Assembly (NCBI GenBank): GCA_900088475.1
Contig: FLMG01000941.1
Coordinates: 186,001 to 250,000 of the forward strand
Reading direction: 5' to 3'
From: Hyphochytrium catenoides
Taxonomy: Eukaryota > Protista > Hyphochytriomycota
Length of the DNA stretch: 64,000 bases
The first letter of the stretch is position 1. Each line of letters begins with the position of its first letter. The notes under the pieces are model-generated. The model was given only the letters and a program-made list of their open reading frames with translations, had not been told where the DNA came from and did no database searches. The translations under genes were made by a program, and so were the position numbers. This document shows positions 1 to 56,108 of this stretch, in pieces.

Positions 1-3879
<3,879 letters not shown>

Positions 3880-4220
3880 CTTCCGTTTACTCTGTATGGG
3901 CCGCAACTGCTGTCAGCAAGGCAGAGATGCTTCGCGAAGTGTCTCGTCGACTCTTGATCTATTGTGCCTTACCTTAGAGGCGAGGGCCAGATGCCTGAGC
4001 GGTGGTTTCCTCTCCCCGCTTGTCAGCACCTTCCTTGTTCAGTGAGTGATCTCGGATGTGGAAGAATGTCAACAGATTAGGAGCTCTGTTAAGTAAGTAG
4101 CTGGGGATGCAGCAGGTGATGCAGCAGCGGGTTGAGAGGGAAAACCAGACAGCAGTGAAGACACTTGGCTCAAGAAATCTCTCTTGCTCAACAATGAACA
4201 ACCTCAAACTCTCCTACACT

Positions 4221-4311
4221 CCTCTCTCTCTCTCTCGTCTCTCTCTCTCTCTGTCGCCTGCGCACTCTCTCACACTCTCTCACACTCTCTGTCTGTCTGT
4301 CTGTCTGTCTC

Positions 4312-4360
<49 letters not shown>

Positions 4361-4388
4361 TCTCTCTTATCTCTCTCCCTCTTTCTCC
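4221..4388. repeat. (CT)n/(CTGT)n microsatellite
   Basis: Dinucleotide run read directly. Confidence 0.95.
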
Positions 4389-4808
4389 TTGTCTGTTGGT
4401 CCAGCATTCGGCAGATTCGGCAGCACCCACCAGCCATCATCTCAAACATATCCACTTCTCAACCCGGGTATGACCCGATTACATCATATATAATATAATG
4501 TCTTTCGTTCCATACACCCGGGTATTTAATCGTCACATCCCCCTAACTACTCACCAGGAATAGTACCAATCTACCCGAGACTAGCCCGAGTAGCAAAGCA
4601 CAATACAGACAGCATTCCACATGTACGACGTCCTAATAAATGCCAGAGGCAATATTCCTCTCGATAGTGCCCTTGAGGACAAAGGTTATGATGAAAGTTA
4701 TTCTCCGAAATTTCCATTATGAAACTCTCACTTTTGCAGACCTACCCACGACACAAAGACGTGAGAATTTGTTTCAATGAACGTCAAATTTATAGTTCTA
4801 TTGTGTAC

Positions 4809-5061
4809 TGTTGGAAGGTTGAATGTTTCGTGCCGTTAACAACCTTCCATGTGAATAGTTATCATCTATTGCGGGGCATTGTTCTTCTTAGCGGCTTGGG
4901 ATTCCGATTCCCCGCTTCTGTCCTTGGTAGAAGAGGACTTCGCAATTTTCTCTGTAAGAGAGATCTGCATCTCTAGAATTGCCAATAAAGAGCTCTGTTG
5001 AGCTCCCAGCGCGTCTTCAATAATTGATTATCAAACGGACAGGGGAACCTATCCGTTAACG
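4809..5061 (+). repeat. 5' LTR (TGTTGG...TTAACG)
   Basis: Matches 9332-9584. AATAAA at 4984-4989; hairpin TGGAAGGTTG/CAACCTTCCA at 4812-4849. Confidence 0.95.
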
Positions 5062-5074
5062 TGGTAGCTGAGCG
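5062..5074 (+). other. Primer-binding site, initiator-Met tRNA-like
   Basis: TGGTAGCTGAGCG immediately follows the 5' LTR. TGG is complementary to tRNA CCA, and the site resembles TGGTAGCAGAG/TGGTATCAGAGC tRNA-iMet PBSs. Confidence 0.7.
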
Positions 5075-5085
5075 TTCTCCGTGCC

Positions 5086-6897
5086 ATGAGAAAGCTCAAT
5101 CGATTGGAGAAGAACCGGCGTCGCAACGTATCCTTTGTTCGGAGAGAATCGGGTGAAGGATCGCAAGCTGGTCGGATTACCAGATCTGAAGGTCAGTCAG
5201 AAGAGCAACCAGAGATGGATAGTGCCTCTTTGGTGAATCAGATGGCTACCCTAAGGGGAGAGGTAAAAGGGATGACATCCACTTTTCAACGAACAGTTAA
5301 GAAGCTGGATAAGTCCATGAAAAGCATGGGCAAGAGGGTTATGAAACTCAAAGAGGAGTTAAAAGACCTCAAGCTTGCTCGGGTAACAGGAAGAACTGAG
5401 TTAGAGGGTGCAGCAAGCCCTAGGAGCTCGGCGAGGCAGAGACCAGCTAAACGTGTGCGCTTTGCTGTTGATCCTCAGCCTTCTTCTTCGGATGGGGCAT
5501 CTTCTTCTTCTATCAATGAGGATAGAATGGATGTCACTGAAGAAGAAGTAGAGCAAGGTCCAGTGAATGCTGCACACACTGGCTCTTCTGCAGAGGCTGG
5601 GACAAGTGGAGCTGCTTCATCTCTATTATCTTCTTCTGGGAAGGATGATTCTTCTAATTCTGAACCGGAGGTTGATCCTGAGGACAGTGCTGACTCATCT
5701 GCTGACTCCTCAGATGAGGAAGAAGAATATGATGAGCAGGTAATGGCTGTTCTTGGAGATTCACAAACCCCTACTGGTTCAAGTCCAGCGTTGACAGGTG
5801 ATGGAAGAGCCATCGCTAGACCAACAGGGAGATTAGAGAATCTCTCACAGATTCCTGACCTTTATGGTTATGAAGGGGATAAAGGTGAGCATCCAAATAT
5901 CAAGGCGTACTTTACGCGCTTTGATAGGATTACAGATGCGAATAACTATTCACCAGAGCAGAAATTGCTGGCTCTGACCCTTAAGGCCAAGGGCAAGGCC
6001 AAAGTTTACATAGAGACCTTGGCATTGAAGGAGGACTTAACATCCTACAAGAGGCTATCAAAAGCCTTATTGCAGTATTTCAACGTTAAGGTTCATCCTT
6101 CAGAGATGGAAGTAGCCAAAGCTTTTTCAGAATTAGACAGAATGGTGCCTACGGCTGCTATTAAGTCTTTCCAAGAATGGCAGGACTTCATTTTTGAGAA
6201 ACATGGAGCACTTATAAAACTGAGGAGGGTACACAGGGAGAACAAACTAAAAAGCCCCAAGTATTCCTTCTTGGCCTCGTGCTTCGTAAATGGCCTGACG
6301 GATGAAGAGAAAAGGTCTTTGAATCCCACGGTATCTAAAGTGAAGAGCAAGGCCGATCTTAATAAACTAGCAGAAGAGTTGAAAACATTACGGTCGTTGC
6401 CAATGGCCAAGGAGAGGAAACGGAAGCGGTTCGAGAATGAGAGAGAGGAAATTAAACCTCAAGGACCTCGACCATCGACGGACTCTCCTAAGGTTAGTCT
6501 CTCAAAAGTACAATGCTACAATTGCGGTGATTATGGCCATAGAAGGGACACATGTCGTCAACCTAAGGTTTCTCAAGATGTTATTTTGGAGAAAAGACGT
6601 GAATTTCTCAAAAGACAGCGTCGTGACGCACAGCGTGGACCGAAGGACCACAGTGATGATCAATCATCTAAGAACCGAGAGGCTAAGTGTACGTTCTGTG
6701 ACGGGAAAGGCAAACCACACTGTGAAGCTAATTGTCCTGAGCGCAAGTGGGCCAAGAAGCTTGTTGCCAGAGCTAAAGAAGAGCAACGACTGAAGATCAA
6801 AAAGTTCCACAAATCCGATTCTGGGGAAGGCGGGCCCAAAGAGGAGCCTCGCCAGCCTCTAGACGGGGGTTTGGGAAACGACAGCCGGAGCTGCTGA
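5086..6897 (+). CDS. gag: Retrotransposon Gag-like protein (603 aa)
   Basis: Intronless ORF inside the LTRs. N-terminal coiled-coil, capsid-like YFTRFDRI segment, CCHC knuckle CYNCGDYGHRRDTC and a second knuckle CTFCDGKGKPHCEANC. Confidence 0.9.
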   Translation: MRKLNRLEKNRRRNVSFVRRESGEGSQAGRITRSEGQSEEQPEMDSASLVNQMATLRGEVKGMTSTFQRTVKKLDKSMKSMGKRVMKLKEELKDLKLARVTGRTELEGAASPRSSARQRPAKRVRFAVDPQPSSSDGASSSSINEDRMDVTEEEVEQGPVNAAHTGSSAEAGTSGAASSLLSSSGKDDSSNSEPEVDPEDSADSSADSSDEEEEYDEQVMAVLGDSQTPTGSSPALTGDGRAIARPTGRLENLSQIPDLYGYEGDKGEHPNIKAYFTRFDRITDANNYSPEQKLLALTLKAKGKAKVYIETLALKEDLTSYKRLSKALLQYFNVKVHPSEMEVAKAFSELDRMVPTAAIKSFQEWQDFIFEKHGALIKLRRVHRENKLKSPKYSFLASCFVNGLTDEEKRSLNPTVSKVKSKADLNKLAEELKTLRSLPMAKERKRKRFENEREEIKPQGPRPSTDSPKVSLSKVQCYNCGDYGHRRDTCRQPKVSQDVILEKRREFLKRQRRDAQRGPKDHSDDQSSKNREAKCTFCDGKGKPHCEANCPERKWAKKLVARAKEEQRLKIKKFHKSDSGEGGPKEEPRQPLDGGLGNDSRSC

Positions 6898-6931
6898 ATG
6901 CGGGGAGGGAGCTCCGGGAGGATAAGCCCTC
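6873..6931 (+). promoter_or_regulatory. Putative -1 programmed ribosomal frameshift signal
   Basis: G_GGA_AAC in the gag frame (6873-6879), 5-nt spacer, then stem CCGGAGCT (6885-6892)/AGCTCCGG (6910-6917). Loop GAGGG (6905-6909) can pair with CCCTC (6927-6931). Confidence 0.7.
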
Positions 6932-7108
6932 TGTCTTTTCGAAGGTAGAGGACGTCCCCGTAAAGTATTTAAAGACAATAGATGGATGTTTGATAGATGT
7001 TACATTATCCTCGGGAGATATGGTTAAGGAGAAGCAGTACAGTCTCGTCAGAATGAGGAAGGGAAAGAGCCCATACCTCAGCTACGAGAAAGAGCTCGTA
7101 GTGAACGG

Positions 7109-9241
7109 ATGAGAGAAAGAGCTCGTCATCCAGGGAAAGAGCCCGTACATGAACAGCGAGAAGGAGCTCGTGGTTGTTATACGCGAGAAAGAGCTCGTGT
7201 TGAACAAAAAAGCGGGAAGCAAAGAGGCTTACCCGAAGACGATAGGGAGCAAAGAGGCTCTCTGATTGATGACCAATATGACTTTGCAAAGGCAAGGAGG
7301 CCAGGGCAAGCAGTTGGCCATGATTCCTTATTCGACGGAAGAGAGGCGAAGGTCCGAGGCGTTCAGCGGGGGAGTAGTGCTGGTATTACTTCTGGTGAAG
7401 GAGACAGAGGCAAGGGCCCTGCCAATGAAGCTCCTACATTCAGAGGTAGTAATATTAGTGCTGATCCCAAGTCTGACGAGGGACAAAGAGGCCTAGTCGA
7501 AGAGAAGGAAGAGGTTAGGTGCTTCACTGATAGCCGAGAACGTCGTCAGATAGATCTCTGGGGGGAGAAGAATCTGGCTGATGTCTTGTCTAACAGTTTG
7601 GAGTTTGACCTACCTCAAACCCCCCGATATATAGGTAGAGCGATGTCGCTGTCGGAGGCTAGACAAGAGATCGTTGCAAAGACAGCAGCCTCTAAGGAGC
7701 GGGATGGACAGGTGAGAGAAGAAGAGAACAGAAAGACGAGTAAGGGTTCTGGCTATTCAGGTGGAATGAGCTTAGCTCCTGAAGCTTCTGTCAAAGCAGT
7801 TCGAAGTGACAATAGGTCACTAGAGCTGAAGACCGGAGCTTGTGAAGGAGGATCGCCGTTCGCCAAGAATAGTTTAGGAGCTGGATCGTCACAGCTCTCT
7901 GATGAAGCTCGCAGCTTGTCCAGCTCTGAAAGAGAGGGAGGAAAGGCATCGGGAGTCCAGCAGGCAAGCTCTGTGGCAGACGAGATGCAAGGCTCAGAAG
8001 GGAACGCTAATGTCATTGAACCGGGATTAGGTGATGTGATTCCCCTTCTAGAGCAACTCAGAGTGGTAATTCCAGCTAGGTTAAGACATTGGCTCATGGA
8101 GGAGACTCATTGTAGTCCTCTAGCTGGAGGTCATTTAGGGATTACGAAGACTTATGAAAAGCTTCGTAGACGATTCTATTGGCCGAATATGTACCGAGAC
8201 GTGAAGCAGTTCATATCGAGCTGTTTGCTTTGTGCTAAACACCCATTCAGCAGGAAGACGCAAGGGGAGATAACTTCATGGAAGGCCACTTACCCTAACG
8301 AGAGCATCCAGGTGGACTTCATTGGTCCTCTCAAGTGCTCCAGGTCTGGCAACATCTACATCCTCGTGATCATTGACGTCTTCTCTCGATGGGCTGAAGC
8401 ATATGCAGTGAGAAGCACTGAAGCCAAAGTGGTGGCCAGGATAATTGTTGGAGAATGGATTGCTCGGTACTCAGTCCCTAAGGTGATCCTTACGGACAGC
8501 GCTAATTCTCTGAATCGGTCGAAGATTATGGAGGAGGTTAATTCCTTGCTTGGTTCTCAAGGGAAGGCAGGTGTCCCCTACTCTCACGGAGCGACAGCAG
8601 CAGCAGAGAGGGTGATCAGAACAATTCGTAGCTTTCTGAAAAAGTATGTCAACGAGGACCATACTGACTGGGATGAGAACATCAATCTTTTGATGGGTGC
8701 TTACCGCATGTCTCAGCACAGCACAACGCAGTTCTCTCCTTTCAGACTCTTCTTCGGTAGAGAACCAAGACTTCCTTCGGACCTTATCCTGGAGACGGAG
8801 TTTGGAGAAGCTAAGTTTGAAAGTATGTCTGACTACGTGCAGGAAAGTCTCAGACAGTACCGCAAGGCCCTCTTGGAGGCTAATCTGAATACTGAACGAG
8901 CTCAGGAGCTTCAGGAGCTGTATCACAATACTGAGGTGCTTAAGCACAGAGTCACTCCTACCTTTCAACCTGGGCAAAAGGTACTTAGATATATACCTGT
9001 GAAGGCTGCAGGTCAGACCAAAAAGTTGGAGACGTTCTGGATTGGGCCTTATGAAGTCATCAGACAGATGAGTCCCGTCATTTATGAGATCAAGCCAACG
9101 AGAGAGTTGATCCAGACATGGCAAGAGAAAGGCCTAAGAAAGCAATGGGGCAGGAAAGCTGTCCACGTCAAGCATCTGAAAGCGTATCCTACTCCGTCAT
9201 CTCCTCCAACCTGTATTCCTTCTACTGGGACAAGTACTTAA
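7109..9241 (+). CDS. Integrase-containing ORF: about 310-aa low-complexity N-terminus, then HHCC, rve core and GPY/F tail
   Basis: THCSPLAGGHLGITKTYEKLRRRFYWP...CLLC; VDFIGP, LTDS and AERVIRT supply the D,D,E residues; WIGPYEV near the end. The frame is open from 7028. No YxDD RT motif and no D(T/S)G protease motif seen. Confidence 0.9.
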   Translation: MRERARHPGKEPVHEQREGARGCYTRERARVEQKSGKQRGLPEDDREQRGSLIDDQYDFAKARRPGQAVGHDSLFDGREAKVRGVQRGSSAGITSGEGDRGKGPANEAPTFRGSNISADPKSDEGQRGLVEEKEEVRCFTDSRERRQIDLWGEKNLADVLSNSLEFDLPQTPRYIGRAMSLSEARQEIVAKTAASKERDGQVREEENRKTSKGSGYSGGMSLAPEASVKAVRSDNRSLELKTGACEGGSPFAKNSLGAGSSQLSDEARSLSSSEREGGKASGVQQASSVADEMQGSEGNANVIEPGLGDVIPLLEQLRVVIPARLRHWLMEETHCSPLAGGHLGITKTYEKLRRRFYWPNMYRDVKQFISSCLLCAKHPFSRKTQGEITSWKATYPNESIQVDFIGPLKCSRSGNIYILVIIDVFSRWAEAYAVRSTEAKVVARIIVGEWIARYSVPKVILTDSANSLNRSKIMEEVNSLLGSQGKAGVPYSHGATAAAERVIRTIRSFLKKYVNEDHTDWDENINLLMGAYRMSQHSTTQFSPFRLFFGREPRLPSDLILETEFGEAKFESMSDYVQESLRQYRKALLEANLNTERAQELQELYHNTEVLKHRVTPTFQPGQKVLRYIPVKAAGQTKKLETFWIGPYEVIRQMSPVIYEIKPTRELIQTWQEKGLRKQWGRKAVHVKHLKAYPTPSSPPTCIPSTGTST

Positions 9242-9320
9242 GCTTCCTCTGCTCACTTCCCTAGATGCTATTGAATTGTTTGAGACTGGTGAGAAAGAGC
9301 TCATCGAGTCTTCCTCAGTT

Positions 9321-9331
9321 CAGCGGGGGAG
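9321..9331 (+). other. Polypurine tract adjacent to 3' LTR
   Basis: CAGCGGGGGAG lies directly before the TG of the 3' LTR. Confidence 0.75.
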
Positions 9332-9584
9332 TGTTGGAAGGTTGAATGTTTCGTGCCGTTAACAACCTTCCATGTGAATAGTTATCATCTATTGCGGGGC
9401 ATTGTTCTTCTTAGCGGCTTGGGATTCCGATTCCCCGCTTCTGTCCTTGGTAGAAGAGGACTTCGCAATTTTCTCTGTAAGAGAGATCTGCATCTCTAGA
9501 ATTGCCAATAAAGAGCTCTGTTGAGCTCCCAGCGCGTCTTCAATAATTGATTATCAAACGGACAGGGGAACCTATCCGTTAACG
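9332..9584 (+). repeat. 3' LTR
   Basis: Direct repeat of 4809-5061, followed by GTAC. Confidence 0.95.
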
Positions 9585-9872
9585 GTACTCGTAAGCACTG
9601 AAAGAAAGATGGGTGGCAACATTTTTGTTTCAATGAAATTGAAAAAAACAAGTGTCGTAAGGCCTTACGTTCCTGTTGTTTTTCATTGAAAGCTGAAGAA
9701 GTTGGCGAAGTCTCTCTCTCACTGACAACTTCCACCTCTTTCAGCCCACGCTGTCAGAAATTCAGAGCTCAGACGCAGAACTGAAGCTTCGAATTCGCAT
9801 CTCTACATGGTATTCTATCACATTTAGTATAGGAGGGAGGGATCTCACGCCATCCCTGACTTGCAAGAGAAA

Positions 9873-11090
9873 ATGTATGCTTCACTGCTAGAGTTTGATG
9901 CAACTGAAAACCCATCTTGGCGTAAGAATGGCGTTCCTTCGACGTCAAAGATGTTAGAGCAAATTGAGGCCTGGGTGGTAGAGTCTGAGGGTTTACCAGA
10001 TTCAGCAAAGCAGTTTGTCAACGAGGTATTCGTGAAGTCCATGGTCGTGAACTATGTGCTCATCTCCAACATGTATGAAAACGTGGGAACCAAGTCGCTT
10101 GCAGACACGCAGAGTGTGATTCAGGATCAACTCAAAGCCTCAGCCGCGAAGGAAAAGGACCGGGACTCTTCTACTGCTGAACGCATCAAAGAAAAAGAGA
10201 CGCTGCAGACATATTTGGCTTTGACGAAGTTCCATGAGCTGTTTCTGCGGAAAGATAAGGAGAACCACGATGGACCAGAGCCTTACAGAAAGACTCATTC
10301 GAGCTTTATAAGTGAAGAGGAGCTCTGTGCCATTCACAAGGTGCTAATGGATGGTCTGACAAAGGAGCCTACAGCAGCAGGAAGAACTCGTCGCGGCTTT
10401 GATACCGTCTCCACTAGAGATAATAATGGGGAGGTTTTCTACTATCCCGACCCGAAGGATGTCGATTGGATGATGGACGGGTTTGTCAACAGATTCAACC
10501 TCTTACTCGATACACTCCACAGTCGGAACTCCAAAATCAAGTATTACTTCAACCTTTGTGGATGGGCACTTTTGAACTTTCTCACGATCCATCCATTTGT
10601 CGATGGTAATGGACGTATGGGTAGACTATTGGTGAATCACGTCCTACGGTTGTTCACTCCATTCCCCGTCAACATGGGATTAGGTATGGATGTGGCCAGG
10701 AGTGAGTATTTAAAGGCGCTCTCTGAATGCCAAAGAAGTCACTTCGAGCTAGGCCATCCTGCCGATCTCACGGCAATGATCATCGAAGGAGCCTGGCGCG
10801 GCTGGCGCGATCTCTACAGTAACTTGGATCGTCTCGGGCTGCGAAAAGAACACAGAGTCTTTCGAGGAGAGGTATTCATCGCTGATCTGCACGATTTGTG
10901 TAGCAAGTATAGGAAGCTTCGAAAAGTAGCCGATCTGGACTCTTTTCAACAAGACGAAGAAGTAAACTTGTTGAGAAAAGGGATTGAAGAGATGTTAGAG
11001 AAGGGCAAGAGTAGAGGGGTGGTTATGCTTCTGAAAGACTCCTATTGCAAAGTAGAACTCTACCTGCCACATCAAAATATTGAGGGATAA
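9873..11090 (+). CDS. Fic/DOC-domain protein (putative AMPylase, class II with N-terminal inhibitory motif)
   Basis: Canonical HPFVDGNGRMGR motif, LCAIHKVLM helix, and SNMYEN matching (S/T)xxxE(G/N). Uninterrupted ORF with first ATG at 9873; an upstream exon is possible. Confidence 0.9.
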   Translation: MYASLLEFDATENPSWRKNGVPSTSKMLEQIEAWVVESEGLPDSAKQFVNEVFVKSMVVNYVLISNMYENVGTKSLADTQSVIQDQLKASAAKEKDRDSSTAERIKEKETLQTYLALTKFHELFLRKDKENHDGPEPYRKTHSSFISEEELCAIHKVLMDGLTKEPTAAGRTRRGFDTVSTRDNNGEVFYYPDPKDVDWMMDGFVNRFNLLLDTLHSRNSKIKYYFNLCGWALLNFLTIHPFVDGNGRMGRLLVNHVLRLFTPFPVNMGLGMDVARSEYLKALSECQRSHFELGHPADLTAMIIEGAWRGWRDLYSNLDRLGLRKEHRVFRGEVFIADLHDLCSKYRKLRKVADLDSFQQDEEVNLLRKGIEEMLEKGKSRGVVMLLKDSYCKVELYLPHQNIEG

Positions 11091-18040: not shown

Positions 18041-19264
18041 ATGTCTTGATGTGGCGACCTGTTCAACCGGTATTATCATGGGTTCATTGTTGCCTGTGCT
18101 TCTCTCAGGCAAGATTGGCTTCGACGCTTAAGGCCGCGATGCTGCTGCCCTCGTCATAGTGAGCGTGAGGAATGCACGAAGGACACAGCTCGGAAAGAGT
18201 GCTGTTAACCCTTTACTTCGCCGCGTTTGTCCTGGGTGGGCATCTTTGTACTAGTAGCAGCTGTAGTGAGATGGAGGTAGAATTTCATTTTGTACACTAG
18301 AGAATCTAATGATAAAGTTCTTCGTGCCTTTCCCTCTTCCCTAGATGTGTCTCACGCGCAACTGCCCGTTCGCAGTTGCATGTTAGCAAACTATCTCAGC
18401 CAGTTCGGATCCGATGCTCCAAAGTTTAGCACCGCTCATCAGCTGTCCATAGATCCACGCTCAACTTTAGTGACAGTCTAGGGTCACGCCAAGGATCAGT
18501 AGTCGTTGGTGTCACTTTATTCGGAGTGCTAAAGAGTCACAATAACCTTCTTGTCATGGTCGAGAAGTGCTCTCTAGAGGTTGCCACTCATGAGACAATG
18601 GAGCACGATATGTAGCAAGTCAGGCATCTTTCATCTATCTCATAAAGTGCTAAGAGCACAAGCTCGGCTGCTCAAATGGTATAGGTTGCAGCAGAAGCGT
18701 CAAACAAACAGCTATCAGTCTAATGCTAAGCTATCCATTTGCAGCAGCACCATGTGGCGCAAAATGAACGCTAGGCTGATGTTAGCCCACAAGTTCCCAC
18801 TTGTTCTTGAGTCCACCATCAGGATCCCATCATAGACCTATGTAGTCATCCTCTTCAGGTGCTGGCTTGCTGGCAGGCAAGGTGTTTGTCTGACCTCATC
18901 TACTCTTCGATTCAGGGCATTCTAACTGACGCTAGGCACACTCTTGCAGGAGGAGGACAGAGTGAGACATCTCCACTCCTTCTTTGGCTTGGGCCAGCTT
19001 CTTGAAGCGGCTTCTATGCCATCAATGCTATCATTCAATAGCCTCTCACTCCTTGAATATCATGCACCATTGCCGGTGTGCCATCCATCTTCTTCGCAGT
19101 AACGTGCCATGAGAGAGGGAGATAGCTTGATAATGACGAGCGGCTCTGCCGTCAATGGAACGCTGAGACGATGGTTCATGACTATCGAACGGTCAGCTAA
19201 GAGATGAAGACCGTTGTTATCGCATTCAACAGTGTTGCTAGAGGGGAGGCGTTCTTTAGGATAG

Positions 19265-19939
19265 GAAAGAGAGAGAGAGAGAGAGAGAAAGTTTCAGGAC
19301 AGGACACAGATGGATCAGAGAGAGAATAGGTATGAGAAAGAGGAGAGAGCTTGAAGAGAGCAGAAGCAGAGAGAGAGAATTGGTGAATATGGTGAAGAGA
19401 GAGAGAGAGAGAATAGAGAGAGAGAGGAGAGAGAGAGAGAGAGGAGAGAGAGGAGAGAGAGAGAGAAAAAGAAAGAGAGATAGAAAGAGAGAGAGAGTGA
19501 GAGGGAGAGAGAGAATGAGAGGGAGAGAAAGAGTGGGAGAGAGAGTGAGAGAGAGAGAGAGAGGGGGAGAGAGAGAGAGAAAAAGAGAGAGAGAGAGAGA
19601 AAGAGAGGAAAAATTTTCTCATCAAAGAACCTTTTCATAACTAATCGTCAATACCCACCCGCCGGTATCAGGCTCCTAAACATAACATGGGGGGTAATCA
19701 TGTAGAACGCCCACCCATCCTCGAATAAACCACTGTGCTAGCCGTTAGCTGCTATACTCCACCCCTCTCATGGGTTCTTTTTGTCACGATAACTCTCCAT
19801 CTCTCTCTTTCTCTCTCTCCCTCTCTCTCTNNNNNNNNNNNNNNNNNNNNNNNNNNNNNNNNNNNNNNNNTCTCTCTCTCTTTAGTTCTATTTCTCTCTT
19901 CCTCTCATCCTCTCTTCCCCGCTCTCTTTCCCTCTCTTC

Positions 19940-19985: not shown

Positions 19986-20493
19986 GCTGTAGCTCTCCTC
20001 CTGCATTCTGGTTCTGCTGCTCTGTCTCTTGACATCTTATGCCCTCCTTCCCCTTTGCTTCATTCCTTCTGTCTGTAGAACGTACGGAGAGAGGCACAGC
20101 GTTTTTGCTGTGGCACAACAGCGAGGAGGAACTGCTTGTCATGCTGTTGCCAGGAACGGCAACACTGACAGCGATCATAGGAGAGAAGGCGCTGGCAAGG
20201 AGAAGAAGAGGACGGCAGGAGAGACCGCAGCCCAGCCTAGCTAGTGCAGGAGAGAGAGGGAAGAGGAGATAGAGAGCGCACAGTATCAGACGTTACGGAT
20301 CGCCGCCTTCAGGGCCAGCCGAATGACTTCACCTCTGCCGAAGAGAGACTCTCAAAACCTCTAGGAAGTCTCTCTCCATCGAGCTCGTCTAGTGATTACT
20401 TCTAGGGAGATTAGAGGAAGAGAGGGGAGCCGAAAGAGAGAGAGAAGAAGAGAGCCTATCTCTGCTCCTTCATCTCCTCCTTCACTCCTAACC

Positions 20494-23400
20494 ATGGCGT
20501 CGGGGTCAGAGCCTCCACCGCCTTCTCCTCCTGTCTTCGTTCACGGCCATTCCTATGATCCCAAACTGCACAGTGGCGCTCCTCTCCTGTATCACGCGCC
20601 TTCAGAGGGAGCCGTCCCTCGCCCACGGCATCAGACGATGGCGCTAGACGGGCCTGTGGAAGAAGAGACTCAGTTGCAGACAGTGCTCTTCCAGGTGCAG
20701 ACGGCGCTAAAGACAGATCTAGGACTGATCGAGAAGCTGATACCTTTGCAGAAAGACAACCCAAGCCCTGAAAAAGTTTTGATCTTTCACTCTCCGGACT
20801 ACCATGAGCGCTCTAGACTGCTAATTATTATGTCCAATCAGTATCCAGGCATCTGGAGCCGCAGTCTCATCTCTAAGGGCGTCAATGACAGCGGGTCTAT
20901 GATGCCTTACCTTAAAAAAGCGAGGAGAGAAGGCTATGGAGTCATTGTTCTCAATCCAGCAGGAGCGGCAGACGCTGCCCGCCTCTTCGGTGTGCAGTTC
21001 AAGGGCAAAACAGCAGCGGATGTCCATGTAGAGATTGTATGGGACGAGCTAGTGAAGCCTCTCGCTTGTGATCTGTACGTGTTGGGCTATGCAAGGGGAG
21101 GCCAGTACGTCAAGCATCTGGTGCAGTATGATGGGGGAGAAGGGGCATTGGAAGACAGACTGAGGGCCATCGCTCTTATAGAAAGCAGTCACATGATGAC
21201 CAAGCAGGATTCAGACTTCGTCCGGTCCGTCTTCTCATCCAAGGCCACGGCGTGGATGAAGGATGATCACGAGATAGGGTCATTAATCTCAGATAAGTAT
21301 CGCCTGGGCTGCACATGTTTGTCATCAGGACCAGTTCAAGCCTTCAAGGACAGCAAGAACTCTGCCTGGATTATCAACCAGGTAGGAAAACTCTGCCAAG
21401 GAGGAGTATGGCTCGTCCCGGTAGCGGAGCAACGCCCTAACTCCTGTGAAGCTTGATCGTCTTCTCTTTCTTCTTCTACTGCTTATTTGACTTTGCGTTC
21501 TCTCTCTCCTTCGGCGGCATGAGCAGGTTCTTGTTCAGGTCTTTCTCTCCTTCGAAGCGAGATTTGATGGCGAGCGCAACTCTTCATCATCCAGCTCGCA
21601 GCGATCGTCCAAGCCCGAGAACACTGAGAGTATCGAGCGGCTCGTGGGAAAGGTAACGCTGCGCTCTTGCGCTTGCATGATGTCTGCAAATTGCTATCTT
21701 TTGACTTTTCAATGTTCAACCTCGTACATGCACCCCTTAGTAGCCCTTCCACTTATTGTTTCAGAGCTGCGCTCTCAACCTCGTCCTCACAACGCCTGGG
21801 ATGTGCCACTCATCTTGTTTTGACACAGATCAAGCGCCGTCTGGTGCATGACTATAGTTTCCGGAAGTACCAAGTCCCTCTGGCGCGAGATGGCACAGGC
21901 GCTCTACAGCAGGTTCCTCTGCTAGTCACCTCCAATTATAAAACAAGCAAGAAGATCCTTGTTATCTTCTCCAGCAGCTTCATGGGCGTCTGGAGTCGCT
22001 CCGCACTTTTGGAGGGAGATGAAGGAGCAGGCAGCATGCTGCAGTTCATCCAGGAGGCTTCCTCTCTCTCCTTCGCCATCATTATCGCCAACTTCTACGA
22101 AGTGGTGGACGTGGCGCGGCTAAGTGGCTCGATGAGCTGTGCCACGGCTATCGACAACCACATCAAGATCATCTGGGAAGACTTCGTGAGCCAGAACCCC
22201 TCCGCAGACCTTTTCTTCTTTGGCTTCTCGAAGGGCGGACAGTATTTGAAACGATTTATCGAGGTAAGGGCAAAAGATGTACTGAAGCAAGGGGTTGGGG
22301 GCTCCTTCGACGAACTTTTCGTTTTCGAAGTTAACAGCAGAACCTGCCGTGTGCCACTCTACGTTCTGATCACCTTGGTAGGTCTACGACCGCAGTGAAG
22401 AGTTAAACCAGCGCGTGCGGGCAATCGCCTTCCTAGAAAGTAGTCACTGGGTGGACTTCAAGGATACATACTATGTCAGGCATATGCTTGCCAGAAAGGC
22501 GGTGGCATGGGTTCTATCAAGGTATGTGGCTGGTGCCTCCTGCCTAGTCTCTGCTTCGGCTGGTCAGCACATTGCTCGAGGCCCTGTGCTTGCTTCTGTA
22601 GCCTCTTAAGCTTAGATCGTCAGCTAACAGCGGTCACACTTTACTTCTCATTCCTCCCACAGAAAACCCCCTGCCACAAAGCTTACCGACTACCAGCGCA
22701 CCCTGGGATGTGTTACTCTTTCTGCGGGTGAGCTTTCGAACATCAGTGGGAACTACGTCTACCTGATGCAGAGCGTCCTCCCCATGCTCTTTGGAGCATT
22801 TCTCGCTAGGCTCGGGCCGTCTGTAGCTTCACAGCTGGCTAAGGTGAGCAGGACATTGAGGAGGAGAGGTTAACGAGGGATGTATCTAGATAGTTCAAAG
22901 GAAAGGCATGTGGTAGGGACTAGATAGCTTCGGATCTTCGTCAAAGTATTACCGCTTATCTATGCCTACTTAGTTCTTCATATTTGTGTTGCTGGCTATC
23001 TATGTTCGTGCCGCTTGCCGCCTTGACCTCGCGTTCTCAGATCTGCAGGCGCCGTTTCAACCTCAAACTAAAGTTTCGCGGCTCTGTTCATCGCTGACTC
23101 CGCTCTTTCTAAATGTCTCTTCGCCGTCTTCAAACCTTGCTGCTCGATACTATTCTTTTTCCCGGCGTCCCCTTAGAAGCAGGCAGGGCGCTGCGCAATT
23201 TGTTGCAAACCCTTCAAGCTGTTCACCTCAAAACAGCGATGCAGCTGGTGCAGGAATGTCTGCTGTGCATATGAAAATATGGAGGTCATGGAGGTGAAGC
23301 ACTCAAAAGTGAAGCTCTGTCCCGTCTGCAAGGTTCTTCCTCTCCTCATGAGCGAGGGAGAGTCGTCGTTGGCTGCCTCTTTAGGTCTAGGGGGAGGAGG

Positions 23401-31263: not shown

Positions 31264-32360
31264 TTCTTTCAGCTCACAATCTGGCTTTCGTCTCTTATTA
31301 TAAGGTCTTGTCGAACCTTGAAAGGCAGATATCCGACTCTTTTTCCAGAAGAGCTTGTCTCTCTCTCACTTGAGCTTTGCAGATGTCAAAAGCTCTGTCA
31401 ACTGGACGATAAGATGCTTTGTCCTGGGCTGGTGAGATCTTTGAACGACAGGTGGCGCGCTCCAGCTCAAGAAAGCGAGTAAGACCCACACAGAAGAAGA
31501 AGCGTTCTGCCTGGCAAGGCCATTCGAAGAATGAGCTTCATCACCCAAGAAGAGAAAGGACGGCCAAAACTTTGGATGAAAGAGAGAGATTGAGGGTGCG
31601 AGCGAGCAAGAGAGACAGACGAAGAGGCGGCAGGGAGGAGAAAGGGCCGTGCGGTCCCATAGAGAGACAGCTGTAACCTGATAGGATGGATTGTGCTGAG
31701 GTATCATAGAGAAAGAGAGAGAGAGAGTGGGGGAAGAGAGAGACAAAGAAAGGGAGAGGAGACAGAGAGAGAGCGAAAGAGAGAGAGAGAGAAAGAAAGA
31801 GAGNNNNNNNNNNNNNNNNNNNNNNNNNNNNNNNNNNNNNNNNAGAGAGAGAGAGAGAGAGTAAATAAAAAGTGTACAGGAACAAGCGTGACCAAAATCT
31901 GGTGGAGGACGAAGAGATAAAACTTTCTAAGGTACAGAGTAGGAGAGAGAGACAGAGTGAGAAGAACCTTAGTAAAAAACAGGATACTTATTAGTAGAGA
32001 ATGACAAAGAGCTATAGATGCAGCGATAGGAAGAGCGAGACAGAGCGCGAGATACCGCTATTCGGACTGAAAACCTTAGGGGAGAAGAGAGACAGAGTGG
32101 AGAACAACAGAGTGAAGGAAGTACAAAAGGCGGGTAGAAGTGATGAGTGAGGACGGGTGGGCCAGTATATTTCCAGTAAGGAAGACCCAGGACTTGATAC
32201 CTTCAGGCACCTTCCCATAGATCTAAATGGCGTCACGCACCTAGACGGCCCCACCCATCTTTGTCCTAACCTAGATTCTTTACTGTGTGAATGTTAGGCT
32301 TTTGAGAGCCCCGCCATTCCCTTTTTCCTCCACCTTTCAAACCCTCTCATACTCATTCTG

Positions 32361-37577: not shown

Positions 37578-37680
37578 GTGAGAGAGAGTGAGAGNNNNNN
37601 NNNNNNNNNNNNNNNNNNNNNNNNNNNNNNNNNNNNNNNNNNNNNNNNNNNNNNNNNNNNGAGGAGGAGGAGGAGGAGGG
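37440..37680. repeat. (GA)n/(GGA)n microsatellite, partly N-masked
   Basis: Read directly. Confidence 0.9.
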
Positions 37681-53685: not shown

Positions 53686-55459
53686 ATGGACAAGGGCAAG
53701 CAAGCAGTGAACAATATGAAGAACATCAAGATGCCACAGGGAGGAGGTCCCCTGCTGGCCCTTGCCAAGGGAGCTGTTGGCATTGGTGTTCTAGCTTATG
53801 CAGGCTATCACAGTCTATTCAACGGTGAGATTTTCCAAGACAGGTTAGATGGAGCTATTGGAGTTCTAACGCATCACTTCGACAGTGGAGGGTGGACACA
53901 GAGCCATTGTGTTCAACCGTCTTGTAGGTATTAAGGAGAACATCTACACAGAAGGAACGCACTTTATGATCCCCTGGATGGAGAGACCCATTATCTACGA
54001 TGTCCGTACTCGCCCACGTAACCTTCAGTCACTGACTGGAAGTCGAGGTACGCGATCATTCAGTTGCAGCCTCCCGAAAAGATATGCCTGATAGATCTTC
54101 TCTATAGATCTTCAGATGGTCAACATTACGCTTCGAGTGCTCTCCAAGCCCGAAATTGCTCACCTTCCTTGGATCTACAGGCGCCTCGGCACTGGTAAGC
54201 CAGCGAGAGTATAGACAAGAGAGAATATGCTTGTTTGCTTCTCTTGCCGCGACAGCTAAGATCTAAGATCCGCTGGCCANNNNNNNNNNNNNNNNNNNNN
54301 NNNNNNNNNNNNNNNNNNNNNNNNNNNNNNNNNNNNNNNNNNNNNNNNNNNNNNNNNNNNNNNNNNNNNNNNGTCCTCTTCGCTTTTTTTGCAGACTACG
54401 ATGAGCGGGTACTTCCATCTATTGTGCACGAGGTGTTGAAGCAGGTAGTCGCGCAGTTCAATGCTTCACAGCTTATCACTCAGAGAGAACATGTCAGCCG
54501 TCTCGTAAGGAGAAACTTGGTAAGCGGTTAGCCAGATGCCTTACCTCTCGCAATCTCCCTCTACAATTTGCGTTTGCTACGTGGGCTAGAGTGTTGTGCA
54601 TTGTTTTACTTGGCTGTAAGTGCATGCTCGTTGGCGATGTCCTCCGCCTTGAAGTTTATTCTCAAGACTCTTGTCCTGACCCTGGTCATCACTCTAGGTG
54701 GAAAGAGCTCAGGACTTCCACATTGTCCTCGATGATGTGGCTATCACCCATCTGAGCTTCGGCCGCGAGTACACCGCGGCAGTTGAGGCGAAGCAAGTTG
54801 GTAAGTAATGGCTCGGTATAAGGGGAAATATCAGGAGGCGAAGACTAAGATGCCAAGAAAATAATACTATTGATGGGAAACGGACTAGGGATGGAGCCCA
54901 TGTTTGACTTCAACCTTTCCCCTTACAGCCCAGCAGGATGCAGAGAGAGCCAAGTACACTGTAGAGAAGGCTCTCCAGGACAAGAAGAGTACCATTATTA
55001 GAGCACAGGGTGAGGCCAAGGCCGCTCAACTGGTGGGCGAGGCTCTCAAGAACAACCCTGGCTTCGTGGAACTCCGTCGTCTTATCACAGCGAGGGAGAT
55101 CGCTTCCACCATCTCTCACTCCAACAACAGAGTCTACCTCAACGCCGACTCTCTCCTCCTCAACCTGCTCAGCGACAGCGGAGCCATCTCGTAAGTGTCC
55201 AACCCATTCTGTTGAACCTGTCAGCTTTACGCTGTCATCCGCTATCGTTGGCCTATCTCTTCTTTCTGGGTCCATGCAATATCGGCAAGATCACTCTTCC
55301 CCGCAGCGTAGCCATGAACAGCCTACTTCTGTTCTTGTTGCTTCTGTCTTGCCTCATCATTCCGATCAAGGTCGAGCTCTGTTTGCTCGCCATCGCAATG
55401 CTCACATTTGTGCGTGCAGTCGTATGCAGGATGGATCCTCCTCAAGCAAGAAGAAGTAG
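53686..55459 (+). CDS. PHB2: Prohibitin-2
   Basis: [80 protein letters not shown] and [12 protein letters not shown]. Confidence 0.95.
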
Positions 55460-55935: not shown

Positions 55936-56108
55936 TATAGATCCGTATGNNNNNNNNNNNNNNNNNNNNNNNNNNNNNNNNNNNNNNNNNNNNNNNNNNN
56001 NNNNNNNNNNNNNNNNNNNNNNNNNNNNNNNNNNNNNNNNNNNNNNNNNNNNNNNNNNNNNNNNNNNNNNNNNNNNNNNNNNNNNNNNNNNNNTAGTACG
56101 GATCTATA
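55936..56108. mobile_element. MITE, 173 bp as assembled (interior N-masked), hAT-like
   Basis: 12-bp TIRs TATAGATCCGTA (55936-55947) and TACGGATCTATA (56097-56108). 8-bp direct repeat ACCACGAC at 55928-55935 and 56109-56116. Confidence 0.8.

What the first reader, a model, noticed from the sequence alone, without database searches (positions are those of the whole stretch)
4809..9584. Recently inserted LTR element with Gag and integrase but no RT, RNase H or protease
Seen: LTRs identical by eye, an exact 4-bp TSD, PBS, PPT and two long stop-free ORFs. The stretch where PR-RT-RH normally sits is only ~1.1 kb of low-complexity coding sequence running in frame into the integrase. Known: identical LTRs indicate recent reverse transcription; familiar non-autonomous types keep no ORFs (TRIM/LARD), Gag only, or Pol only. 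Inference: a semi-autonomous family that supplies its own capsid and integrase and borrows RT in trans.
Basis: partly seen in the sequence, partly recalled or inferred. Interest (0 to 1): 0.75.

Follow-up and report, generated by a model that had tools for sequence, protein, structure and literature searches.

The report
LTR retrotransposon lacking protease, RT, RNase H
This is a very recently inserted Ty3/gypsy-type LTR retrotransposon that keeps gag and an intact-looking integrase gene but has lost protease, reverse transcriptase and RNase H, so it must have been copied by another element's enzymes; this is an ordinary kind of defective element, and nothing yet shows that it founds a new family.

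Summary
The LTRs at 4809-5061 and 9332-9584 are 253/253 identical, flanked by GTAC. A TGG primer-binding site follows the 5' LTR and a polypurine tract precedes the 3' LTR. ORF1 (603 aa) is a gag with two zinc knuckles. ORF2 (open from 7028) ends in a complete integrase with zinc finger, D-D-E and SH3/GPY-F. No protease, RT or RNase H was found by Pfam, by tblastn with RT-bearing relatives, or by profile comparison.

Gag carries a canonical -1 frameshift signal (GGGAAAC, 6-nt spacer, 8-bp stem). The frame it feeds stops at 7112. ORF2 lies one further frame away, so no simple route translates the integrase.

The 345 codons before the integrase are truly open (0 stops against 19 expected), predicted mostly coil and without relatives. 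The nearest kin, P0019, shares gag and integrase and is fully autonomous.

Best reading: a non-autonomous internal-deletion derivative mobilised in trans. Two by-products: a central copy of the polypurine tract, and seven hairpins with an AAAGAG loop.

The parts
4805..4808 (+). Target-site duplication GTAC, left copy
   Evidence: identical to 9585-9588.
4809..5061 (+). 5' LTR, 253 bp, ends TG...CG. AATAAA at 4984. Hairpin 4812-4821/4840-4849.
   Evidence: 253/253 identical to the 3' LTR..
5062..5079 (+). Primer-binding site, starting TGG directly after the LTR. The tRNA was not identified.
   Evidence: No tRNA gene in the window. No self-priming complement in the LTR.
5086..6897 (+). ORF1 = gag, 603 aa. 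Acidic, serine-rich N-terminus, helical core, and two zinc knuckles at 6514-6555 (CX2CX4HX4C) and 6688-6735 (CX2CX6HX4C).
   Evidence: zf-CCHC E=0.003; residues 239-494 align with the gag part of the gag-pol polyprotein P0019, E=9e-12; also P0049, E=2e-4; knuckle coordinates.
6867..6920 (+). Candidate -1 ribosomal frameshift signal. Tandem heptamers G_GGT_TTG and G_GGA_AAC (6867-6879), a 6-nt spacer, then the 8-bp stem 6886-6893/6913-6920.
   Evidence: both heptamers are in the gag frame; chance of any such heptamer in that overlap is 0.075; the stem is in the minimum-energy fold, but the fold z-score is only -1.07.
6777..7112 (+). Short ORF in the -1 frame, in the 'pol/pro slot'. It overlaps the gag end by 120 nt and ends at TGA 7110-7112. 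No protease motif. A possible relic of the first protease strands lies at about 6927-6971.
   Evidence: No Pfam hit. Protease N-terminus HMM, p about 0.02 by shuffling: weak.
7055..7205 (+). Array of six hairpins with the hexaloop AAAGAG (AAGGAG once). It contains a diverged 72-bp tandem duplication (7060-7126 and 7132-7198, 76% identical) and a second in-frame heptamer, G_GGA_AAG, at 7061-7067.
   Evidence: repeat D4; motif found 7 times against 1.5 expected.: -54.6 kcal/mol, z=-5.27, 0 of 200 shuffles; 75% of cells paired against 29-50% when slid; covariation reached by 9 of 500 shuffles.
7028..8062 (+). Pre-integrase part of ORF2, 345 codons. E, G, R, S and A make up 54% of residues. Predicted mostly coil. 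No homologue found.
7274..7330 (+). Possible relic of the conserved RNase H tail (YDF..RPG....D.L). Weak.
   Evidence: Best hit of hhalign (E=0.46). BLASTP against P0019 also picks it, among other equally weak chance-level hits (E=6.9). hmmsearch: 37 of 2000 shuffles score as well.
7361..7375 (+). Second exact copy of the polypurine tract plus the first LTR base. Candidate central PPT near the midpoint of the element.
   Evidence: 2 matches in 64 kb, 0 expected.
8051..9241 (+). Integrase. H2C2 zinc finger 8069-8239. Catalytic core from 8291, with D 8315-8317, D 8495-8497 and E 8606-8608. SH3/GPY-F module 8996-9181. No chromodomain.
   Evidence: Pfam; hhalign probability 100%, E=1.3e-73, 372 aligned columns, with the zinc and D-D-E columns conserved; coordinates.
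9289..9306 (+). Seventh AAAGAG-loop hairpin, just upstream of the PPT.
9318..9331 (+). Polypurine tract abutting the 3' LTR.
9332..9584 (+). 3' LTR.
9585..9588 (+). Target-site duplication GTAC, right copy.

Best explanation
This is a non-autonomous internal-deletion derivative of a Ty3/gypsy (Metaviridae) LTR retrotransposon. Its lineage includes the autonomous gag-PR-RT-RH-IN polyprotein P0019.

Shown: the element has every cis signal for replication (identical LTRs, PBS, PPT and a central PPT copy), an intact gag with a canonical -1 frameshift signal, and an intact-looking integrase ORF. It has no protease, RT or RNase H.

Inferred:
- Its RNA was packaged and reverse-transcribed by proteins of a related autonomous element and integrated with a 4-bp duplication, so recently that the LTRs have not diverged.
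- The PR-RT-RH block was lost between about 6970 and 7270, leaving the integrase part out of frame with the frameshift-fed pol frame.
- The integrase ORF is therefore most likely a young relic rather than an expressed gene. Gag may still be made and could favour the element's own RNA in cis.
- The 290-345 codons before the integrase are read as an expanded, disordered RNase H-to-integrase linker that also carries RNA signals (the central PPT and the hairpin array).

Whether this copy is unique or one of a family is unknown.
For: Structure and youth.
Gag.
Integrase complete, with zinc-finger and D-D-E columns conserved.
Absence of PR, RT and RNase H in all frames.
Every checked relative whose sequence reaches far enough upstream has RT and/or RNase H directly upstream of its integrase.
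P0019 shares both gag (E=9e-12) and integrase (37% identity, including the unusual HG[AS]T motif before the catalytic E) and is autonomous.
Frame staircase, with stops bounding each frame.
Canonical GGGAAAC heptamer, 6-nt spacer and stem.
Two weak relics in colinear order and in the expected frames: protease N-terminus in the -1 frame (p about 0.02) and RNase H tail in the integrase frame (p about 0.02).
Homology to the RNase H-integrase linker of P0019 resumes at about 7898-8050.
Precedent for trans-mobilised, partly coding deletion derivatives: PMC6466679 (IAP 1-delta-1) and PMC13570524.
Against: The 290 codons at 7028-7900 are open, show coding-like codon-position composition and resemble no PR, RT or RNase H. 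A simple recent deletion of a P0019-like parent would leave recognisable flanks, so either the parent already had an unusually long linker or the lineage has evolved as a deletion form for some time.

The two 72-bp repeat units differ by 24%, so that region is old relative to the insertion.

Both relics are statistically marginal and were tested after being seen.

Both frame overlaps carry X_XXY_YYZ heptamers (joint chance 0.007). This leaves open a designed double frameshift that would express the integrase.

No helper element and no second copy were found.
Confidence: 0.62

Rival explanations
1. A maintained semi-autonomous family makes its own Gag and, through two successive -1 frameshifts (a gag / short middle ORF / ORF2 staircase like the gag-pro-pol of beta- and deltaretroviruses), a Gag-X-integrase fusion. 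It borrows only RT, RNase H and protease in trans.
For: Both ORFs are intact, and the integrase keeps all zinc and D-D-E residues. The 345-codon extension is open at a level that 0 of 5000 shuffles reach, with coding-like composition. In-frame slippery heptamers sit in both frame overlaps, each followed by a hairpin; joint chance 0.007. The old diverged repeat array argues for a lineage history.
Against: The second heptamer ends in G, which from general knowledge is disfavoured in eukaryotes, and it is simply part of the repeated GGGAAAGAGCCC hairpin motif. Its spacer is 13 nt. Two sequential frameshifts would give very little product. There is no protease to release the integrase. The relative P0019 is a single ORF, not a staircase. 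No second copy was found anywhere that could be searched. Intact ORFs are expected anyway in a copy this young.
Confidence: 0.17
2. A full-length autonomous copy inserted first and then lost PR-RT-RH by a genomic deletion (illegitimate recombination), so no trans-mobilisation ever occurred.
For: Only one copy is seen. An out-of-frame junction is what a random deletion gives. Short repeats (GAGAAAGAGCTCGT, four times) lie at the presumed junction.
Against: The deletion would have to be younger than an insertion with 0 of 253 LTR differences. The flanks of the gap are not recognisable PR or RNase H fragments, although the integrase next door scores E=1e-73. The junction-region repeats are 24% diverged, so they predate the insertion.
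Confidence: 0.15
3. The middle 1 kb is foreign: host or other sequence captured by template switching, as in maize Bs1 (named from general knowledge) or retroviral transduction. It replaced PR-RT-RH and fused in frame to the integrase.
For: No homology to any retroelement domain. The frame is open and coding-like.
Against: No homologue of any kind turned up in the word search, which covered only proteins of 405-1290 aa, or in the rest of the window. The region contains an exact PPT copy and hairpins that recur in the element's own 3' untranslated region, so it looks native. It has the same purine-rich strand bias as gag.
Confidence: 0.04
4. Assembly artefact: a collapsed or chimeric assembly of a full-length element.
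For: Identical LTRs are hard to assemble. The window has five runs of N elsewhere.
Against: There is no N inside 4809-9584. A collapse would not create 1 kb of unique, open, in-frame sequence. The TSD is exact.
Confidence: 0.02

Closest known systems
Autonomous Ty3/gypsy (Metaviridae) elements of the lineage represented by P0019, a 1719-aa gag-zfCCHC-PR-RT-RH-IN polyprotein from a Logan assembly
   Same: The gag core is homologous (E=9e-12). The integrase is 37% identical over about 390 residues, including the unusual HG[AS]T motif before the catalytic E and the NE..TDWD motif. Both have an acidic N-terminus and a CCHC knuckle.
   Different: P0019 has protease, RT and RNase H in one continuous ORF. 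The window element lacks all three, has gag closed by a stop with a -1 frameshift signal, and has about 270 residues between the putative RPG motif and the zinc finger, where P0019 has about 110.
Mouse IAP 1-delta-1 proviruses (PMC6466679)
   Same: An internal deletion derivative of an LTR retroelement that keeps coding sequence on both sides of the gap. It is non-autonomous, needs proteins in trans, and is recently active. Its own residual protein may act in cis.
   Different: In 1-delta-1 the 1.9-kb deletion fuses gag and pol in one ORF, and many copies are documented. Here gag and ORF2 are in different frames and only one copy is known. The lineage also differs: a betaretrovirus-like ERV against Ty3/gypsy.
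TR-GAG elements and other partly coding non-autonomous LTR retrotransposons of plants (PMC13570524, which cites Chaparro et al. 2015, PMC4350172)
   Same: They have LTRs, PBS and PPT plus a retained gag ORF, with replication enzymes supplied in trans. The sugar beet survey lists 15 families that retain at least one partly decayed POL-associated domain (RT, RNase H, integrase or chromodomain), eight of them together with GAG/PROT remnants.
   Different: TR-GAG elements by definition lack all enzymes. The beet POL remnants are described as partly decayed. Here the integrase is complete with catalytic residues, and the element is 4.8 kb.
Beta- and deltaretrovirus gag-pro-pol organisation with two -1 frameshifts; PEG10 and other Ty3/gypsy derivatives that use GGGAAAC (both from general knowledge)
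   Same: Three ORFs, each one frame back from the last. There is a GGGAAAC heptamer with spacer and stem at the gag end, and a second heptamer with a hairpin at the next overlap.
   Different: The middle ORF here offers only 63-80 codons and holds no protease. The second heptamer ends in G. The function of either site is untested.

Membership tests
LTR retrotransposon, Ty3/gypsy (Metaviridae) superfamily | Two direct long terminal repeats flanked by a short target-site duplication | tested here: met
   253-bp LTRs, 100% identical; GTAC on both sides.
LTR retrotransposon, Ty3/gypsy (Metaviridae) superfamily | LTR termini 5'-TG...CA-3' | tested here: inconclusive
   The LTR starts TG but ends CG (TGTT...AACG). 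One end is canonical and the other is not.
LTR retrotransposon, Ty3/gypsy (Metaviridae) superfamily | PBS next to the 5' LTR and PPT next to the 3' LTR | tested here: met
   TGG... at 5062 and a purine tract at 9318-9331. Complementarity to an actual host tRNA was not testable, because the window has no tRNA gene.
LTR retrotransposon, Ty3/gypsy (Metaviridae) superfamily | Gag with CCHC nucleocapsid knuckle(s) | tested here: met
   Two knuckles. Gag homology to P0019, E=9e-12. The capsid fold is not confirmed: the AlphaFold2 model had pLDDT 42.7.
LTR retrotransposon, Ty3/gypsy (Metaviridae) superfamily | Integrase of Ty3/gypsy type (HHCC, D-D-E, GPY/F or SH3 module) | tested here: met
   Pfam Integrase_H2C2 and rve pass their cut-offs; SH3_Tf2-1 and Integrase_p58_C match below theirs (E=1.7e-4 each). 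hhalign E=1.3e-73 against Ty3/gypsy pol proteins.
LTR retrotransposon, Ty3/gypsy (Metaviridae) superfamily | Reverse transcriptase and RNase H, with RT before IN | tested here: not met
   No RT or RNase H by Pfam at E<=1, six-frame tblastn or hhalign. The element can therefore be assigned to the superfamily only through gag and integrase.
Autonomous LTR retrotransposon | Complete PR-RT-RH-IN coding capacity | tested here: not met
   Only the integrase is present.
TRIM / LARD | No protein-coding capacity between the LTRs | tested here: not met
   Two ORFs of 603 and 710-737 codons with recognisable gag and integrase.
TR-GAG | Gag ORF retained and all enzymatic domains absent | tested here: not met
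   A complete integrase ORF is present.
IAP 1-delta-1-like in-frame deletion derivative | The deletion fuses gag and pol remnants into one ORF | tested here: not met
   Gag stops at 6895-6897. ORF2 is in another frame, with stops at 6860, 6923 and 7025.
   One copy in the window. None in the metagenome, viral or prokaryote collections or the protein libraries.
   A single frameshift or readthrough is not possible. A second heptamer with hairpin exists but is non-canonical.
Ginger-type DNA transposons (gypsy-like integrase, 4-bp TSD; named from general knowledge) | Terminal inverted repeats rather than direct LTRs; no gag, PBS or PPT | tested here: not met
   The terminal repeats are direct, and gag, PBS and PPT are present.

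The most novel reading that the evidence does not exclude
A retroelement lineage has evolved as a stable 'half-parasite'. It keeps gag and an integrase carrying a new 345-residue disordered N-terminal extension, expresses the integrase through two successive -1 frameshifts, and competes for a helper's RT by means of an amplified array of AAAGAG-loop hairpins that act as packaging or dimerisation signals.
Probability: 0.12. Interest if true: 0.6.

Novelty: new member of a known kind. Interest (0 to 1): 0.3.

Why it matters
If it is only a young deletion derivative, it is a routine annotation item. It is still useful as a marker that an active autonomous Ty3/gypsy helper exists in this genome, and as an insertion about 280 bp upstream of a Fic-domain gene.

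If copies with the same structure prove numerous and constrained, it would document a division of labour not yet named among LTR elements: capsid and integrase in cis, polymerase in trans. It would also give a natural system for asking which retroelement proteins act preferentially in cis. The hairpin array and the central PPT are concrete candidates for the cis signals that let defective elements compete for a helper's machinery.

Tried and rejected
Searches that found no close relative:
- Word search with ORF2, gag and the pre-integrase part: only five distant integrase hits for ORF2, none for gag, none for the pre-integrase part.
- Full HMMER search of ORF2: 65,628 hits, but the top 150 all match the integrase only, at 38% identity or less.
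- Metagenome scan: 11 distant loci. The four with enough upstream sequence carry RT-RNase H next to the integrase; one more shows only an RNase H fragment, and L001 has RT downstream.
- Viral and prokaryote collections with gag, LTR, PBS and PPT patterns: nothing. Phage megablast: nothing.

Structure prediction: single-sequence AlphaFold2 of the gag core and of the pre-integrase part gave low confidence (pLDDT 42.7 and 49.8), so no fold search was run.

Other checks that gave nothing:
- Rfam: no family in the window.
- Self-priming (Tf1-like): rejected, because nothing in the LTR is complementary to the PBS.
- The protease C-terminus-like hit at 7550-7669 (E=0.013): rejected as chance, being non-colinear and E=0.35 in a larger set.
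- Codon-position test on the 72-bp repeat pair, to decide which frame was selected: uninformative.
- Pre-integrase part against gag and against the rest of the window: no similarity.
- Host identity: not obtained. Neighbouring genes only show an intron-bearing eukaryote, not human-like.

Full report
**Observation**

- LTRs: the repeats at 4809-5061 and 9332-9584 are 253 bp each and identical at every position. Identity breaks on both sides at the stated boundaries.
- Target-site duplication: GTAC lies on both flanks, at 4805-4808 and 9585-9588.
- LTR ends: the LTR starts TG but ends CG, so only one terminus is canonical.
- Primer-binding site: a TGG-initiated PBS follows the 5' LTR at 5062.
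- Polypurine tract: a purine tract abuts the 3' LTR at 9318-9331.
- Copy number and gaps: there is a single copy in the 64-kb window and no N inside it.

**Coding content**

ORF1 (5086-6897, 603 aa) has two nucleocapsid-type zinc knuckles, at 6514-6555 and 6688-6735. Its core aligns colinearly, up to the first knuckle, with the N-terminal part of P0019, a 1719-aa gag-PR-RT-RH-IN polyprotein (E=9e-12; domains). It also aligns with P0049. It is a gag. A single-sequence structure model was all-helical but too uncertain to use (pLDDT 42.7).

ORF2 is open from 7028 to 9241, with its first ATG at 7109. Residues 342-732 form a full Ty3/gypsy integrase:
- Pfam matches Integrase_H2C2 (1.3e-20) and rve (1.6e-9), and, below Pfam's own cut-offs, SH3_Tf2-1 and Integrase_p58_C (E=1.7e-4 each).
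- Profile comparison with 14 autonomous relatives gives E=1.3e-73, with the zinc-binding H/H/C/C and the D, D and E columns all conserved.

**What is missing**

No protease, RT or RNase H is detectable.
- Pfam found nothing at E<=1 in the open frames between gag and integrase.
- tblastn of seven relatives (six of them carrying RT and/or RNase H) against all six frames aligned only the integrase.
- hhalign of the 345 pre-integrase residues against the PR-RT-RH-IN profile gave E=0.46.
- BLASTP against P0019 found nothing.

By contrast, every close integrase relative that was checked, and every metagenomic locus with enough upstream sequence, has RT and/or RNase H immediately upstream of the integrase.

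**The middle stretch**

In the integrase frame, 7028-8101 has no stop, where shuffles have 19.3 on average (0 of 5000 open). The first codon position is G+C-rich (0.62, against 0.41 at the third position). It is, or very recently was, coding.

E, G, R, S and A make up 54% of its residues. It is predicted mostly coil with two isolated helices, at low confidence.

It has no relative in the word search or among the 158 proteins fetched. It shows no similarity to gag or to the rest of the window.

Recognisable similarity to the RNase H-integrase linker of P0019 resumes only at about 7898-8050. The window element lacks about 23 residues there, just before the integrase.

**Reading frames**

Gag ends at TGA 6895-6897. 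The -1 frame is open from 6777 to 7112, so it overlaps the gag end by 120 nt. That overlap holds two adjacent in-frame slippery heptamers, G_GGT_TTG and the canonical G_GGA_AAC (6867-6879). They are followed by a 6-nt spacer and an 8-bp stem (6886-6893/6913-6920) that appears in the minimum-energy fold. This looks like a normal gag-pol frameshift signal. That GGGAAAC is a proven heptamer is my own knowledge.

The frame it feeds ends at 7110-7112 after 77 codons and contains no protease motif. The ORF2 frame is one further step back. It has stops at 6860, 6923 and 7025, so it cannot be entered from gag directly.

The two frames overlap only in 7028-7112. That overlap holds a third heptamer, G_GGA_AAG (7061-7067), 13 nt before a strong hairpin. 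Heptamers in both overlaps by chance have probability 0.007. However, the second one ends in G and is part of a repeated hairpin motif.

The integrase is therefore either untranslated in this copy, or made in very small amounts by a double frameshift, by internal initiation or from a spliced RNA.

**Origin**

Two weak relics fit a deletion model.
- The -1 frame peptide at about 6927-6971 resembles the strands that precede a retropepsin active site (59 of 3000 shuffles score as well).
- ORF2 residues 83-101 (7274-7330) resemble the conserved RNase H tail (YDF..RPG....D.L). This was the top hit of hhalign and hmmsearch and one of several chance-level BLASTP hits to P0019, and 37 of 2000 shuffles score as well.

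They are colinear and each lies in the expected frame. Each is marginal, and each was tested after being seen.

They would place the loss of PR-RT-RH between about 6970 and 7270. That is the region occupied by a diverged 72-bp tandem duplication and four copies of GAGAAAGAGCTCGT. One out-of-frame deletion would explain why the upstream pol frame and the integrase frame differ by one.

Two things do not fit a simple, very recent deletion. The linker between the putative RNase H tail and the integrase is about 270 residues, against about 110 in P0019. The two repeat units differ by 24%, far more than a copy with identical LTRs could have accumulated since insertion. So this region was already like this in the source lineage.

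**Relatives and family status**

- The full HMMER search found 65,628 integrase relatives. None exceeded 38% identity, and none of the top 150 matched the pre-integrase part.
- The exact ORFs are not in the 15-billion-protein collection.
- The metagenome, viral and prokaryote collections hold no copy.

The key test, copy number and a helper with related LTR and PBS, could therefore not be run. Absence here says little.

The host is an intron-bearing eukaryote with about 49% G+C. The neighbouring genes are housekeeping genes: adenylosuccinate synthetase, a Fic-domain protein, a bZIP factor, Arb2-domain proteins, peroxiredoxin and SPT16. It is not human-like, and its identity was not established.

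**Mechanism**

Best supported: the element is a non-autonomous deletion derivative. Its RNA, carrying PBS, PPT and a central PPT, was packaged, reverse-transcribed and integrated with proteins of a related autonomous element. Its own Gag may contribute and may favour its own RNA, as shown for the residual protein of mouse IAP 1-delta-1 (PMC6466679).

Partly coding non-autonomous LTR elements form a continuum that is already described (PMC13570524). I therefore file this as a new member of a known kind. The maintained gag+IN family reading is kept at about 0.15.

**By-products**

- An exact 15-nt copy of the PPT plus the first LTR base sits at 7361-7375, near the midpoint of the element (0 expected). 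It is a candidate central PPT.
- The stretch 7055-7205 folds into six hairpins with the hexaloop AAAGAG (z=-5.27, 0 of 200 shuffles). A seventh lies at 9289-9306, just before the PPT. Their stems differ but mostly stay paired: 75% of cells against 29-50% in slid controls, with the covariation score reached by 9 of 500 shuffles. I read them as candidate cis-acting RNA signals (packaging, dimerisation or frameshift stimulation). This is inference only.

**Limits observed**

I name where the frames break but not any change that would join them. A bench mobilisation assay is referred.

Noticed in passing
window 7361-7375: An exact second copy of the 15-nt polypurine tract plus the first LTR base (GTTCAGCGGGGGAGT), near the centre of the element. 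Candidate central PPT; 0 matches expected by chance.
   Followed up: partly
window 7055-7205 and 9289-9306: Seven hairpins share the hexaloop AAAGAG (AAGGAG once). Their stems differ in sequence but mostly stay paired. The fold z-score is -5.27 for the array. Possibly a cis-acting RNA signal.
   Followed up: partly
window 4768-4788 and 9624-9644: A 21-nt direct repeat (86% identical, with 14 nt exact: TTTGTTTCAATGAA) lies 21 and 40 bp outside the two ends of the element, beyond the TSD. It may be a repeat in the target region or chance (about 0.08 expected).
   Followed up: no
window 9861-11090: A Fic/DOC-domain ORF (Pfam E=6.4e-14) starts about 280 bp downstream of the 3' LTR, on the same strand. 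The insertion sits in its likely promoter or 5' region.
   Followed up: no
window 5059-5061 and 9582-9584: Both LTRs end in CG rather than the CA dinucleotide that integrases usually process. The other terminus is the canonical TG.
   Followed up: no
window 4222-4402 and about 19197-19625: Long (TC)n and (TCTG)n microsatellites lie just upstream of the insertion and again near 19.2-19.6 kb, where they read as SLSLSL ORFs.
   Followed up: no
window 20392-21456 and 21667-22398: Two adjacent same-strand ORFs. The first matches the Arb2 domain (E=7e-20). By eye the second shares motifs with it, which suggests a tandem gene pair.
   Followed up: no
window 19831-19870, 31804-31843, 37595-37660, 54280-54372, 55950-56093: Five runs of N (assembly gaps). 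None is in or next to the element.
   Followed up: yes
L001 2938-5556: In this metagenomic contig the integrase match (2938-4065) lies upstream of the RT-RNase H match (4330-5556). That is the reverse of the normal order, so it is probably two adjacent or nested elements.
   Followed up: no
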